A stretch of 64,000 bases of DNA from Kudoa neothunni (taxonomy: Eukaryota > Animalia > Cnidaria): NCBI GenBank assembly GCA_964304625.1, contig OZ199840.1:4492458-4556457 (forward strand), written 5' to 3'. The notes beneath the pieces are model-generated. The model was not told the DNA's origin and did not search any database. It saw only the letters and a program-made list of their open reading frames with translations. The translations under genes and the position numbers were made by a program. Of this stretch, positions 14,480 through 28,420 are shown piece by piece. Position 1 is the first letter of the stretch; each line of letters begins with the position of its first letter.

Positions 14480-17400
14480 CTTAGTTGTTCATCTATGAAA
14501 AGTAGTAATTATATTAAATAGCAGAGTTTAGAATAAAATAAGTTCTTAAAATTTATTTACACTTAATATTTGTTAAATAATTTATATTTTTTAGCTAAAT
14601 AAAAATAGAGCATTAAATGTACGAAAAAGACATTAGTATTATTAATAATGAAACTAAGTATACTGTCGGAGAAAATTCAATCAGTTTAAAGATAAATGCT
14701 GCAACGTTAGATTTAAACAATATTATAAATTCAAGTAATTAGTAAAGTATTATTAAATAATGATACAACAAATATATGACTTTATATAATGTTATGATTT
14801 TTTTCCATACTATGATATAGGTGAACAGTCATCTTGTAACTGACGGGAGGGTTAAATAGCCCTAAAATAGTTAAATGTAGGTGAGAATAAAAATAATGTG
14901 AGTAGGTCATTTTTTTGGAAGAAATAGACAAGAATGGAAGTTATTATGATAGTTATTTCAAATCCTCTTCGATTCCATTAAACTAAAGTGTCTCATTCGT
15001 ATACAATACTTAATTCATTTATTCAACTAATGAATACACTAGGAGATATGAATGCATTAATTTTTCTTTAATACGTTGAATGGATTCATTAGTTTATAAT
15101 CTACGCATACATTTATTAAGTTTAGAATTTCATATCTAATTTTCCTGAAATAATTTTTACATTATATATTCTGATTTTTATTTGCTAAATATTTTATTTG
15201 GTGTTAAACGATAAGGCCGGGTATATCCAATATATTAAACTTAATGAAATTTATTCATGATTTATTTGGTGCTCATTAATTCCGATAATAGATAATAACG
15301 AAGAATTAATATATGAGGTTGCCATTTTGGTTTCTATTTTCAACTATTCTCACAACGAGTAAATTGTTATGTTTAATCTTCCTTTAATTATTTTATTCAT
15401 ATTTAGTATGTTGTCACAAATATTTTATCAAACAAATCGAACGACCTGAGCCTGTGCCTGTACCTGTAGAACCGAAAACAGAAGGTGATATACAAAGCGG
15501 GACCGGGGTTAGTCAAAGCAATATTTTAATGTCAAATATTCCCTTGATGCTGATGAAATCCGCTGATTCTGAGGGTACTCAGGCGGCTGCTGCTGATGGT
15601 CCTGATGTTAGTGATGATCATGGTGACTCTGACGATGATGCTGATGAAGCTGGTGCTACTGGCGAAGCTGGCGCTGATACTGACAATGAAGGTAGTAGTG
15701 ACTCCACGGGTGATTCTTCCTCATCAACCGAGGATACAGAATCAACTACCACTGCCGCCCCTATTGAAACCACAATAAATCCACAAGATATACCTATGGT
15801 TGATCAAGAAATCTCAAAAATACATGGATGAAATCACAATTCATTTGAAGGGAGAAGAAGTCGATAAGTGCAAAATAGAACATTTGATTAGAGATGGAGA
15901 TAGAGCCAAATTCAATGAAACTATGTGCACAATAGGCACTGGAACCGACAAAGTTGTATGCGAACCTAACTGTAACGAGAAGGTTGTGATTAAAGTTAAT
16001 AGTGGAAGGTCGATGCACTATTTCAGAATTACTGAAGGAATCAAAATTAATATACTAGCGGTTCCAGCTGGTAAATATTAATGATTAATTAGTTTTGTTA
16101 ATTTTTTGATAGATATGCCAAGACTTCCTGAAACTAATGTTACACTTAGTGAAGAGGAAGCTCAATTCAGTGTTAACAATTTCTGCACAGACAACTACAA
16201 ATGTCGAGTTAGAAGCACTAACCAAGATACAACATTGGTCAAAGTAGAAAATAACAATTGTTCTGCATATAATATCACTGTACCCATTCGCTACTCAATG
16301 TCCAGTTCCTACTACTCTTACTGTGGTGCTACTCAAGCTAAAGTCATGTTCTATGCCAATAAATCTTTCTATAATAAAGATAACAAATTTAAATATATTC
16401 CGTTCACCGTATCACAATCAGGTACATCAGACAAATTCCCCATTGGAAGTTCAAAATCCTTACATGGGCTATGAAATCTGCAATTTCCAAATAAAAGGTA
16501 GTACCGCTACCTATTATGACAAATGTAGTGAAATTAAAATCGACGGTGATAAATGTTTTAAATATTGCGGTGGAGCCACCACTCTAGAATTGACGGGACA
16601 AAGTGGATCTGCTACTGATTATACCGTCAAAATTGCTACTAGGCATGGAGAAAAAGAATATAAAATAAAACGGTATATCCTTAGTAAATAAATAAAAAAT
16701 AATACAATATAGCCGGGAAAAATACTGTTGCCATATCTGATATTACAACAACCTCAGCTAGTTATCAAGTTACTAATACTGATTCTTCTAAATGTTATCC
16801 GTCCTTGGTACACGCGAAATTTCCAGGTATTCCAATGAGCGATATATGTGGAGACGGAAGAAACGAAAAATGCACTGATGTATGTGCCACAAAACGACAT
16901 TAAAACTACTAACTCCTAACACACCATATATACTTGAAATGAAGATAGGAACTAGTTTAAATACTGCAGATCACGTTGTTAATAAATTTTTTTCAACAAG
17001 TACATATATATTTATATATTATAAATACTAAATCTCATTAGCTCCAATTAAATTCGATGGAACACAAGCCTTGTTTTTTGGTAACACAATGATTATGACC
17101 CCAAGAACAGCGAGTGAATATGAGTCTTATCTCCCAAAAATGAAATGCTACGTGAGATATGAAATGCGCAGAAAATCTCGAAAAATAATAGCAACTTGTT
17201 CGAATGGAAAACCATGTTGGGGTTTGTGTTCTCAAAGATTTAAAGTGATAAATTTGCCTGTTAATATAACCCTAAGTATCGAGTTGGTTCATGCTGGTCA
17301 CACTAATCATACAGTTTATCAAGTGTCGCAACTAATAAGTGAATAAACATTGATTTAAGAACATTAAAACACAGAATTTTAGGACCAAGTGATAATAAAG

Positions 17401-18311
17401 TAAAACCAGAAATAACATTTGACACTAATGAAAAAAGATTAACAATCATACCAAACAAAAATCAACCAGGGAATTTATGTGACGTTGTGATCTACGCAGT
17501 CGATCCCCGCGAATCCAAAGGACAAATTCTTGTTTGAGAAATTGGAAAATCAACTGATGATGATATTGATTGTGCCAATTCGGTTGTCTTCGACAATATA
17601 GATATAAATTACAGGTATCAGTTATCGTCAGGTGATGGACAAGCTGCAGCCCTCATTGAAGAAATTGAAGTTGGAAGTAATTTATTAAGTACTATTTATA
17701 TTTGTAATATATATTTTTTAGGACAAGGAACTGGGTAAAAATATGTTTTATTTAAAATTTTTTAATTTAAAATGTTGTTTTTTATAGTGGTTGGATGAAA
17801 AAGAATTGGTGGATGTAATTTTAACATGTTAATGTAATACAAAAATTGCATAAAATTTTTATTTAGTATCCTCGCGGTGTTAGGTGCTTTGGGTGTGGTA
17901 ATTGGTGGAGTGGCCTTTATGGCAAGTAAATCCAAGAACTAAACATCTCATTTCTTTCTACTGGAGAAAACATTATATTACTTCTTATGAAACAATGGTT
18001 ATTATTTACAATTATAGTAAAATGACTTAATTTTAATTTCAATAAACAATATCTAGATTCTTTGTAGAAATTAAATATTTTGTTCTTTTAGGATAAACTT
18101 AACTTAATATTGTATTTTTTCACTGAGTTAATTTTATGTACCTTTTGAGTTTTGATTTAATTAATAATCCTCGTAAATCCCTTTATTTGGGTTGAATCAA
18201 AGAATATCCTACAATAATTTTTGAAGTAAGAATTATTTAAATAGCTTGTATAAAAGTATACATTCTTAATAATGTGAATCACTTTACTTTTATTTAGGCA
18301 TTCAAAATTTA
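14480..18311 (+). repeat. Left arm of a ~3.8-kb inverted duplication (partner 24588-28420)
   Basis: Reverse-complement homology runs from ~830 bp upstream of the ATG to ~370 bp past the stop. The inner breakpoint lies after TTTAGGCATTCAAAATTT. Confidence 0.92.
15313..17942 (+). CDS. Surface-protein family copy 2: 9-exon type I membrane protein, ~750 aa
   Basis: ATG at 15313. Introns include 15359-15406, 16071-16112, 17339-17382, 17677-17721, 17735-17787 and 17815-17866. The C-terminus is WWIILAVLGALGVVIGGVAFMASKSKN*. Several single-base homopolymer indels relative to copy 3 (e.g. 15816-15820, 16438-16441). Confidence 0.85.
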
Positions 18312-27500: not shown

Positions 27501-28420
27501 ATTAAAGGAAGTTAAAAGGTAATAATTTACTCGTTGTTAGAATAGTTGAAAGGAGAATCCAAAATGGCAACCTCATATTATATTAATTCTTCGTTATTAT
27601 CTATTATCAGAATTAATGAGTACCAAATAAATCGTGAATAAATTTCATTAAGTTCAATACAGTGAATATACTCGGCCTTATCATTATACATCAAATAAAA
27701 TATTTGGCAACAAAAACTGGATCATATTTAGTAAAAATTATTTCAGTAAAATTAGATATGAAATTCTAAGCTTAATGAGTGTATGCGTAGATTATAAACC
27801 AATGTAATATATTCAAAGTATCCAATACAAATTAATGTATTCATATCTACTAGTGTATTCATTAGTTAAATAAATGAATACGTATTGTATATGAACGAGA
27901 CACTGGTTTACGGGAATCGAAGAAGATTTGGAATCACTAGCACAATAACCTCCATTGCTTCCCATTTCTGAAAATAAAATGACTTCCACTCAATTATTGT
28001 TAATTACACCGACTTCAAACTGTTTAAAGGCTATTTACCCTCTGATAGGTTCCAAGGGTCTGCAGACCTGTTTCGGGGTATGAAAAATGATCCTAAAATA
28101 AAATCATATATTTGTTTTATCATTATTCATTAATACTTTATTATTTTTTTATTTTTTAATAATAAATTAAAGTTATAATTTTTAAAATTAAAGTTGAAGA
28201 ACTTATCTTTAACCTGATTGAATTTTTTTTCCAACAACATAATTAGTTTAATTATTGGTAATACTAATGTCTTTTTCGCACGTTTAATGCTGAATTTTTA
28301 ATTAGTTAACAAATATAAAATATTGAAGCTTTATTCAGCGTAAATATTTTCTGAGGACTTAGTTTTATACTAAAATCTACTATTAAGTCTATTTACTATT
28401 CTTCAAAGATGAGGAACTAA
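24588..28420 (-). repeat. Right arm of the ~3.8-kb inverted duplication
   Basis: Reverse complement of 14480-18311. Confidence 0.92.
24957..27576 (-). CDS. Surface-protein family copy 3: apparently intact 9-exon type I membrane protein, ~750 aa
   Basis: ATG at 27576, TAA at 24957-24959. The ORF-track pieces 26812-27378, 26203-26787, 25869-26093, 25554-25829 and 25192-25413 join through short GT-AG introns. Signal peptide and C-terminal TM segment are present. Confidence 0.9.

What the first reader, a model, noticed from the sequence alone, without database searches (positions are those of the whole stretch)
14480..28420. Inverted pair of surface-protein genes with patchwork identity: candidate conversion-driven antigen diversification locus
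Seen: copies 2 and 3 face each other tail-to-tail in ~3.8-kb arms around a ~6.3-kb TE-filled spacer, and identity is blocky. They are essentially identical over ~15690-16270 (including intron 2) and ~17215-18311 (including introns and ~370 bp of 3' flank). They diverge strongly in the N-terminal stalk (~15450-15690), in loops at ~16400-16680, and upstream. Copy 1 is closer to copy 2 in exon 1 but closer to copy 3 in intron 1. Inference: repeated segmental gene conversion, or inversion by recombination between the arms, homogenises the membrane-proximal part while distal parts diversify, as in variant surface-antigen systems.
Basis: partly seen in the sequence, partly recalled or inferred. Interest (0 to 1): 0.8.

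Follow-up and report, generated by a model that had tools for sequence, protein, structure and literature searches.

The report
Gene-conversion mosaic in inverted surface-protein genes
Two facing copies of a membrane-protein gene in the tuna parasite Kudoa neothunni really are patchworks of each other and of their neighbours, through ordinary copying between sister genes (gene conversion); nothing shows a programmed antigen-switching system.

Summary
Observation confirmed. Two copies of a 9-exon gene lie tail-to-tail (c2 14476-18399 +; c3 28424-24503 -) around a 6.1-kb spacer built of dispersed repeats. Overall identity is 89.5%, in blocks. There are no substitutions over 595 nt (15686-16281) or over 1,098 nt (17213-18311, including four introns and 369 nt of 3' flank). 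Identity is 57-67% in the N-terminal acidic region and 77% upstream.

Copy 2 is a mosaic of at least three neighbours: a cB-like 5' end, copy 3, a private variable block, copy 1, then copy 3. A permutation test and block trees support this strongly.

The best reading is ectopic gene conversion within a 60-kb cluster. It acts between direct and inverted copies alike, so the inverted geometry has no demonstrated role.

The genome is Kudoa neothunni. The gene encodes a 750-aa type I membrane protein of FN3-like modules, from an undescribed family of at least 150 members.

Programmed antigenic variation is not supported: most copies are complete genes, and the tracts homogenise conserved parts.

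Copy 2 is frame-broken as assembled, but only by 1-nt run-length changes that look like low-coverage HiFi errors.

This scan has already reported the same kind of mosaic at several other clusters of this genome.

The parts
14476..18399 (+). Arm 1: copy 2 (c2) with about 840 nt of upstream and about 460 nt of downstream homology
   Evidence: BLASTN against arm 2, 89.5% over 3,984 columns; 100-nt identity profile
24503..28424 (-). Arm 2: copy 3 (c3)
24957..27576 (-). c3 coding region: 9 exons, intact, 750 aa. Exons: 27576-27531, 27482-26823, 26780-26226, 26185-25901, 25858-25562, 25517-25224, 25177-25165, 25111-25085, 25032-24957. All introns are 40-53 nt, GT-AG, phase 1. Encoded parts in order: signal peptide, acidic Ser/Thr-rich region, beta-sandwich modules with conserved Cys, transmembrane helix, 5-residue tail.
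   Evidence: Gene model read from the sequence and checked by script. The same model is open in cA, cB, cF and six chromosome-1 copies.
15313..17942 (+). c2 coding region projected from c3. Exons: 15313-15358, 15407-16070, 16113-16672, 16713-16999, 17042-17338, 17383-17676, 17722-17734, 17788-17814, 17867-17942. The frame is broken, as assembled, in exons 2, 3 and 4, and there is a compensated +1/-1 pair in exon 6.
   Evidence: Most breaks are c2-only 1-nt run-length changes (15816, 16890, 17505, 17538). The breaks near 16429 and 16671 lie in divergent sequence and are less clear.
15686..16281 (+). Tract A: c2 equals c3 (c3 27206-26612), 595 nt, no substitution, one 1-nt indel. Covers the end of exon 2, intron 2 and the start of exon 3.
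   Evidence: block tree shows c2 and c3 identical
16282..16705 (+). Private variable block of c2: second FN3-like module of exon 3, with hypervariable loops between invariant Cys framework. The nearest copy, cB, is only about 87% identical.
   Evidence: the block tree is star-like with no supported fork
16706..17342 (+). Tract B: c2 equals copy 1, which lies head-to-head 13 kb upstream. 637 nt, no substitution, one 1-nt indel. c3 differs here up to position 17212.
   Evidence: block tree puts c1 with c2 at 97/96 support
17213..18311 (+). Tract C: c2 equals c3 (c3 25687-24588), 1,098 nt, no substitution, three 1-nt indels. Covers part of exon 5, exons 6-9, introns 5-8 and 369 nt of 3' flank.
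   Evidence: block tree 100/100
15184..15380 (+). cB-like 5' block of c2 (promoter-proximal region, exon 1, intron 1), 98-99% identical to copy cB about 30 kb upstream
   Evidence: block tree puts cB with c2 at 99/98
15466..15662 (+). Hypervariable N-terminal acidic, low-complexity region of c2 (c3 counterpart 27432-27242). 57-67% identity, with in-frame indels of 3-12 nt.
   Evidence: dN/dS 1.3-1.8 over residues 31-97, but the alignment is unreliable there
18400..24502 (.). Spacer: about five adjacent non-autonomous dispersed repeats (spacer positions about 521-1617, 1678-2909, 2906-3831, 3868-4800, 4842-6020). No long ORF.
   Evidence: Whole-genome DNA search gave dozens of matches at 76-89% on all three chromosomes; ORF list
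1..1407 (-). 5' part of copy 1 (c1); the rest lies before the window. Donor or recipient partner for tract B. One 1-nt insertion near the end of exon 2 breaks its frame as assembled.

Best explanation
The locus holds two convergently oriented members of a five-gene cluster that spans about 60 kb on chromosome 3 of Kudoa neothunni. The cluster, cA, cB, c1, c2 and c3, belongs to a very large, undescribed family of type I membrane proteins built from FN3-like, Cys-stabilised beta-sandwich modules.

The block pattern comes from repeated ectopic (interlocus) gene conversion. Stretches of 0.2-1.1 kb were copied between sister genes by homologous recombination repair. Each event erases all differences in a tract, introns and flank included.

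- c2 carries at least four such tracts from three partners (cB-like, c3, c1, c3).
- Conversion occurs between direct and inverted copies alike and is confined to the cluster.
- The most divergent parts (N-terminal acidic region, loops of the second module of exon 3) escape homogenisation. This may be because selection keeps them different, or because divergence itself blocks heteroduplex formation.

Shown: the tracts, their statistical significance, the tree incongruence, the gene model and the family size. Inferred: the recombination mechanism, the surface location, and any role in host interaction.
For: Tracts and significance
- Zero-substitution tracts: c2=c3 595 and 1,098 nt; c1=c2 637 and 293 nt; cB=c1 243 and 425 nt; cB=c2 and cB=c3 about 323 nt.
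- Runs test on 934 polymorphic sites: 261, 149 and 90 consecutive shared sites, against a permutation maximum of 58. Global p < 0.0005.
- Block trees move c2 from cB (99/98) to c3 (identical), to unresolved, to c1 (97/96), to c3 (100/100).

Constraint and recent duplication do not explain it
- Non-coding DNA inside the tracts is 100% identical (introns 2, 5, 7 and 8, plus 369 nt of 3' flank). Upstream DNA is 76.9% identical and introns 1 and 4 are 87-88%.
- The spacer is unique to this pair and is made of diverged dispersed repeats.

Assembly context
- The window contains no N.
- Each mosaic (2.6 kb) is far shorter than a HiFi read. The assembly is a HiFi meta-assembly (PMC12239612).

Gene and family
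- 750-aa open model in c3, also open in 9 other copies.
- FN3-like fold matches at Z 7-8.
- At least 150 strong exon matches in the genome.
- Only 20 matches among 1.84 billion public protein representatives.
Against: - No read-level confirmation.
- The published assembly had only about 7x k-mer coverage.
- c2 carries five to seven c2-only 1-nt run-length changes inside otherwise identical tracts, and no substitutions. This suggests that c2 rests on very few, uncorrected reads.
- The direction of transfer is unresolved.
- No expression or localisation data exist. The paper reports that very few RNA reads mapped to the parasite.
Confidence: 0.8

Rival explanations
1. Programmed antigenic variation. 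Copy 2 is a silent, frame-broken donor cassette, and copy 3 is an expressed gene that is remodelled by segmental conversion, possibly with flipping of the spacer. This would resemble the VSG, ves1 or vlsE systems.
For: - c2 is frame-broken as assembled while c3 is intact.
- Hypervariable loops sit on an invariant framework.
- A preprint states that antigenic variation has been seen in a few myxozoans and that its mechanism is unknown (10.64898/2026.02.11.705288).
- Inverted identical pairs of surface-antigen genes are known in Giardia muris (PMC7641422).
Against: - c2's breaks are 1-nt run-length changes with no accompanying substitutions, which is the pattern of HiFi read error.
- None of these changes has been passed to c1 or c3.
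- 10 of 15 close copies are complete genes with a signal peptide. The region upstream of the ATG is 82-92% conserved among the six chromosome-3 copies.
- The tracts cover conserved parts and skip the variable block 16282-16705.
- Window dN/dS in the loops is at most 0.7.
- The neighbouring tail-to-tail pair cA/cB has no long tract.
Confidence: 0.08
2. Assembly artefact. The identical blocks arose from consensus or error-correction mixing between paralogs or haplotypes in a low-coverage meta-assembly.
For: - About 7x coverage, residual haplotypic duplication that was purged, and manual curation (PMC12239612).
- c2 shows an error-like excess of 1-nt indels.
Against: - If c3 reads had been used to correct c2, the run-length errors in c2 would have been corrected too.
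- The arms are inverted and have different flanks, so full-length read overlaps between them are impossible.
- c2 also shares exact tracts with c1 and cB, which lie 13-33 kb away.
- Pairs that do not involve c2 (cB-c1, cB-c3, c1-c3) show clean tracts with no indels.
- The window contains no gap or N.
Confidence: 0.07
3. A recent inverted duplication was followed by fast local divergence, through positive selection or replication slippage in the variable regions, without any conversion.
For: The strongest divergence lies in a low-complexity acidic region prone to slippage, with dN/dS above 1 there.
Against: - Non-coding upstream DNA is only 76.9% identical, and introns 1, 3 and 4 are 87-93% identical, while other introns are 100%.
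- c2 is identical to c1, not to c3, over 16706-17212, and is nearest to cB at its 5' end.
Confidence: 0.03

Closest known systems
Ectopic (interlocus) gene conversion and concerted evolution in clustered multigene families, for example mitotic recombination among Plasmodium falciparum var genes (recalled from my own knowledge, not checked here)
   Same: Complete paralogous surface-protein genes exchange sub-kilobase to kilobase tracts. This yields in-frame mosaics that keep the domain architecture. Exchange is favoured by proximity and by sequence identity.
   Different: The protein family is different (FN3-like modules, Kudoa-restricted) and the lineage is different (a cnidarian parasite). 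No rate, timing (mitotic or meiotic) or phenotype is known.
Segmental gene conversion in antigenic variation: Babesia bovis ves1 (PMC7485966) and mosaic VSGs of Trypanosoma brucei (PMC3708902)
   Same: Short tracts copied from paralogs create mosaic surface-protein genes.
   Different: Those systems have one active expression site fed by silent or pseudogene donors, and the changes target the variable, exposed parts. Here most copies are complete genes, no expression site is visible, and the tracts mostly homogenise conserved parts.
Inverted (tail-to-tail or head-to-head) identical pairs of VSP genes in Giardia muris (PMC7641422)
   Same: Pairs of surface-protein genes in inverted orientation, separated by a few kb of unrelated sequence and kept identical or nearly so.
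   Different: Giardia pairs are identical over the whole gene and encode CXXC-rich VSPs. Here the identity is blocky (89.5% overall) and the fold is FN3-like.
Arm-to-arm gene conversion in large palindromes such as those of the primate Y chromosome (recalled from my own knowledge)
   Same: Inverted arms around a unique spacer, homogenised by intrachromosomal conversion.
   Different: Those arms are more than 99.9% identical along their whole length. Here only two tracts are identical, and c2 also receives sequence from copies outside the pair.

Membership tests
Interlocus gene-conversion mosaic | Pairwise identical tracts longer than expected from the overall divergence | tested here: met
   Runs of 261, 149 and 90 polymorphic sites against a permutation maximum of 58; global p < 0.0005. 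Exact tracts of 595, 637 and 1,098 nt.
Interlocus gene-conversion mosaic | Adjacent blocks give incongruent, supported phylogenies | tested here: met
   The sister of c2 changes from cB to c3 to c1 to c3, with support of 97-100.
Interlocus gene-conversion mosaic | Identity extends through non-coding DNA, so constraint does not explain it | tested here: met
   Introns 2, 5, 7 and 8 and 369 nt of 3' flank are 100% identical; upstream DNA is 76.9%.
Interlocus gene-conversion mosaic | The mosaic is present in single sequenced molecules | not testable with these tools
Programmed antigenic variation by segmental gene conversion (VSG, ves1, vlsE type) | One expression site plus an archive of silent or truncated donors | tested here: not met
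   10 of 15 close copies are complete 9-exon genes with a signal peptide. The region upstream of the ATG is conserved among the six chromosome-3 copies.
Programmed antigenic variation by segmental gene conversion (VSG, ves1, vlsE type) | Conversion replaces the variable, exposed segments | tested here: not met
   The tracts cover conserved modules, introns and flank. The variable block 16282-16705 and the acidic region stay private to each copy.
Programmed antigenic variation by segmental gene conversion (VSG, ves1, vlsE type) | Mutually exclusive expression and recognition by host antibody | not testable with these tools
   No RNA run holds the locus. The source paper reports very few parasite RNA reads.
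Palindrome with arm-to-arm homogenisation | Near-uniform identity above 99.9% along the arms | tested here: not met
   89.5% overall, ranging from 57% to 100% in 100-nt windows.
Fibronectin type III / Ig-like beta-sandwich domain | Predicted seven-strand beta-sandwich that matches solved FN3 domains | tested here: inconclusive
AF2 model of exon 3 has pLDDT 69.5. Best matches are FN3 domains and tandem-FN3 receptors at Z 7.0-8.3, a range the tool calls common.
Fibronectin type III / Ig-like beta-sandwich domain | Match to the Pfam fn3 or Ig profile | tested here: not met
   No Pfam family reaches its cut-off on any exon, even when matches up to E = 10 were listed.
CUB domain | Profile similarity over the whole domain | tested here: inconclusive
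   The family profile hits starfish cubilin CUB repeats only through many weak stretches of 8 bits or less each. hhalign probability is 50% over 58 columns. The structure search favours FN3-like folds.

The most novel reading that the evidence does not exclude
The clustered family members, this inverted pair included, act as a somatic or mitotic diversity generator. On this reading, segmental conversion, and possibly flipping of the spacer by crossover in the 1.1-kb identical tract, continually makes new surface-protein mosaics during infection. That would give the first molecular basis for the antigenic variation reported in myxozoans. The error-like state of c2 could then reflect a locus that differs among nuclei and is therefore supported by very few reads.
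Probability: 0.1. Interest if true: 0.8.

Novelty: new member of a known kind. Interest (0 to 1): 0.4.

Why it matters
Myxozoans are economically important fish parasites. According to a 2026 preprint, their means of persisting in the host, reported antigenic variation included, has no known molecular basis.

This family is restricted to Kudoa-like sequences and has at least 150 members, in a genome with about 5,300 predicted genes. Its members look like membrane proteins, have hypervariable loops, and exchange sequence among neighbours. That makes it a concrete candidate set for host-interface proteins.

The mechanism itself, gene conversion between paralogs, is textbook biology. This scan has already reported the same pattern at other clusters of this genome. 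The added value of this locus is modest:
- it shows that conversion works across inverted neighbours;
- it shows that one gene can take sequence from three partners.

Tried and rejected
- Family identification by Pfam: nothing on any exon.
- ESM Atlas by features: no usable hit. By shape: only generic bacterial beta-sandwich proteins.
- Word-based protein search: one 70%-identical ORF on a 920-nt metagenome scaffold.
- CUB-domain lead from the large HMMER search: weak. Not adopted.
- c2 as a true pseudogene donor: not adopted. Its breaks are c2-only 1-nt run-length changes inside tracts that carry no substitutions.
- The pair plus spacer as a duplicated module: rejected. The spacer between cA and cB shares only one 668-nt piece, 76% identical, with the region at the c2 arm end (18270-18927).
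- Upstream homology as a transposon: rejected. It matches only family copies on chromosome 3.
- Positive selection in the exon 3 loops: not shown. pN/pS is at most 0.69 in 12-codon windows.
- The joined 750-aa spliced model was used only inside local scripts, for frame checks and dN/dS. It was not sent to any search or folding tool. Searches were made exon by exon, by reference.
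Full report
**What is there**

The window is AT-rich (about 30% G+C) and contains no N. The repeat finder and BLASTN show an inverted repeat. Arm 14476-18399 (+, copy 2, c2) aligns with arm 28424-24503 (-, copy 3, c3) at 89.5% identity over 3,984 columns, so the two genes lie tail-to-tail.

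A 100-nt identity profile is strongly bimodal:
- 100% at 15751-16250 and at 17248-18245;
- 57-67% at 15466-15662;
- 79-82% at 16351-16648;
- 64-86% upstream.

The tracts without any substitution are 15686-16281 (595 nt) and 17213-18311 (1,098 nt).

By feature:
- introns 2, 5, 7 and 8 and the first 369 nt after the stop codon are 100% identical;
- the 860 nt upstream are 76.9% identical;
- introns 1, 3 and 4 are 87-93% identical.

The small claim about copy 1 also holds. In exon 1 it shows 1 mismatch to c2 and 5 to c3. In intron 1 it shows 5 mismatches to c2 and 2 to c3.

The spacer (18400-24502) has no long ORF. It consists of about five adjacent dispersed repeats that match dozens of places on all three chromosomes at 76-89%.

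**Whose genome**

The assembly has 40,260,978 bases in 4 pieces: 17.15 Mb, 12.04 Mb, 11.05 Mb and 18,219 nt. The small piece uses TGA as a sense codon and has no standard tRNA genes.

PMC12239612 describes exactly this assembly for Kudoa neothunni, recovered from HiFi reads of a yellowfin tuna:
- 40.2 Mb;
- scaffold N50 12.0 Mb;
- three chromosomes;
- an 18,219-bp mitochondrial contig;
- median intron 49 nt.

I take the identification as settled. The same paper reports only about 7x k-mer coverage, purging of residual haplotypic duplication, and very few parasite RNA reads. All three matter below.

**The gene**

On the minus strand, c3 reads as a 9-exon, 2,253-nt open model of 750 aa. The encoded parts, in order, are:
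- a signal peptide;
- an acidic Ser/Thr/Gly-rich low-complexity region;
- Cys-containing modules of about 95 residues;
- a transmembrane helix;
- a five-residue tail.

All introns are 40-53 nt, GT-AG and phase 1, so every module exon is symmetrical.

No Pfam family reaches its cut-off on any exon. An AlphaFold model of exon 3, built on 36 family sequences, has mean pLDDT 69.5 and shows two beta-sandwiches. Its best structural matches are FN3 domains and tandem-FN3 receptors at Z 7.0-8.3. That fits an FN3-like fold but lies in a range the tool itself calls common.

A profile search of 1.84 billion public protein representatives found only 20 matches. They are short exon-like ORFs from a few metagenome or run assemblies, plus weak multi-repeat hits to starfish cubilin CUB domains. 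The CUB lead stayed weak (hhalign probability 50%).

Inside the genome, the same profile gave 150 strong matches (all E below 1e-35) among the 150 candidates that were scored, out of 572 candidates. The family is therefore very large for a genome annotated with about 5,300 genes.

I did not send the joined spliced protein to any search or folding tool. Searches were made exon by exon, by reference.

**The mosaic**

Fifteen close copies exist:
- five in a 60-kb cluster on chromosome 3: cA +, cB -, c1 -, c2 +, c3 -;
- one, cF, 6.3 Mb away on the same chromosome;
- nine on chromosomes 1 and 2, at about 77% identity.

Along a six-way alignment, c2 changes its nearest relative repeatedly:

| c2 segment | Nearest copy |
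|---|---|
| 15184-15380 | cB, 98-99% |
| 15686-16281 | c3, identical |
| 16282-16705 | no close partner (best is cB, about 87%) |
| 16706-17342 | c1, identical |
| 17213-18311 | c3, identical |

A Sawyer-type runs test on 934 polymorphic sites gives 261 (c2-c3), 149 (c1-c2) and 90 (cB-c1) consecutive shared sites. The maximum in 2,000 permutations was 58.

Maximum-likelihood trees of the five blocks place c2 as follows:
- with cB (support 99/98);
- with c3 (identical);
- unresolved;
- with c1 (97/96);
- with c3 (100/100).

Tract ends fall inside exons, not at exon borders. This is homology-driven copying, not exon shuffling.

**Role of the inverted arrangement**

I see none.
- cB and c1 are in direct orientation and share tracts of 243 and 425 nt.
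- c1 and c2 are head-to-head and share 637 nt.
- The other tail-to-tail pair, cA/cB (5.8-kb spacer), shares no tract of 150 nt or more.
- cF and the copies on chromosomes 1 and 2 take no part.

The pattern is ordinary proximity-dependent ectopic conversion. A crossover within the 1.1-kb tract would invert the spacer. This remains possible but is untested.

**Diversification**

Synonymous divergence among the intact chromosome-3 copies falls to about 0.1 over residues 559-708, against 0.3-0.7 further 5'. Tract A, however, lies in the distal half.

dN/dS exceeds 1 only in residues 31-97, the acidic low-complexity region. That region has many in-frame indels, and its alignment cannot be trusted.

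The second module of exon 3 has hypervariable loops between invariant Cys and framework motifs, but pN/pS there is at most 0.69.

The variable parts may persist because selection favours difference. Equally, diverged sequence may simply no longer support conversion. I cannot separate the two.

**Is copy 2 a pseudogene?**

As assembled, its frame is broken in exons 2, 3 and 4, and exon 6 has a compensated +1/-1 pair.

The changes that lie inside the identical tracts are c2-only 1-nt run-length differences:
- A5 for A4 at 15816;
- A4 for A5 at 16890;
- C4 for C3 at 17505;
- A3 for A4 at 17538;
- T3 for T4 at 17700 (in an intron).

They come without a single substitution in about 2 kb. Tracts between other pairs have no such indels.

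This is what uncorrected HiFi read errors look like in a thinly covered stretch. I therefore rate a true pseudogene at roughly one in three.

The pattern also argues against consensus mixing. Had c3 reads been used to correct c2, these errors would have been removed.

**What could not be done**

As a result there is no read-level confirmation, no test of spacer orientation and no expression evidence.

**Comparison with what is known, and verdict**

The process matches concerted evolution by interlocus gene conversion, as in many clustered families.

It resembles the mosaic formation of Babesia ves1 (PMC7485966) and trypanosome VSGs (PMC3708902) only in the copying step. The defining features of those systems were tested and not met: a single expression site, silent donors, and replacement of the variable parts.

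Inverted identical pairs of surface-antigen genes are documented in Giardia muris (PMC7641422). They are the nearest geometric parallel.

In the held paper library, a search for Kudoa together with gene conversion, multigene family, fibronectin type III or variant surface listed no Kudoa paper among its best results. The source genome paper contains no occurrence of 'gene famil' or 'surface'.

Other follow-ups in this scan reported the same kind of mosaic at several other clusters of this genome. The phenomenon is therefore genome-wide, not special to this locus.

Verdict: a real and statistically solid gene-conversion mosaic in an undescribed, very large Kudoa membrane-protein family. The antigen-diversification reading is a hypothesis without direct support.

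Noticed in passing
window 15816, 16890, 17505, 17538, 17700 (also near 16429 and 16671); c1 near window -470: Copy 2 carries five to seven 1-nt run-length changes found in no other copy, with no substitutions around them. Copy 1 is broken by one T-run change. 5 of 15 close copies are frame-broken as assembled. This may reflect local HiFi errors in a roughly 7x assembly and could inflate pseudogene counts across this genome.
   Followed up: partly
window 24957-27576 (all eight introns): Every intron of the gene is phase 1 and 40-53 nt long, so each FN3-like module (or pair of modules) is a symmetrical 1-1 exon. This is the classic layout of shuffled extracellular domains in animals.
   Followed up: partly
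G000:C3:4467400-4480400 (22-35 kb before the window): A second tail-to-tail pair of the same subfamily (cA + and cB -), with a 5.8-kb spacer. Its spacer shares only a 668-nt piece (76% identical) with the region at the c2 arm end (18270-18927), and the pair has no long identical tract.
   Followed up: partly
whole genome (G000): The two-module exon 3 profile finds 150 strong matches among 150 scored of 572 candidates. Many lie in dense arrays, for example C2 at 9.79-9.87 Mb, C1 at 16.44-16.56 Mb and C3 at 0.07-0.19 Mb. The family may make up several percent of all genes.
   Followed up: partly
window 18920-24420: The spacer is a stack of about five non-autonomous repeats of 0.9-1.2 kb. Each has tens of copies at 76-89% identity, and some have short inverted ends. 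They are probably MITE-like derivatives of the DNA transposons common in this genome.
   Followed up: partly
window 4391-4999 (-): An ORF of 202 aa matches the piggyBac-type transposase domain (PF13843, E 1.8e-12).
   Followed up: no
window 33523-34227 (+) and 49361-50563 (+): An FHA-domain ORF (PF00498) and an RMI1 N-terminal OB-fold ORF (PF08585) are ordinary housekeeping neighbours.
   Followed up: no
L047 (ENA ERZ28624939, scaffold_20316, 920 nt): A metagenome scaffold encodes an exon 3 homolog that is 70% identical to c3. It probably comes from a related Kudoa present in another public sample.
   Followed up: no
   Followed up: no
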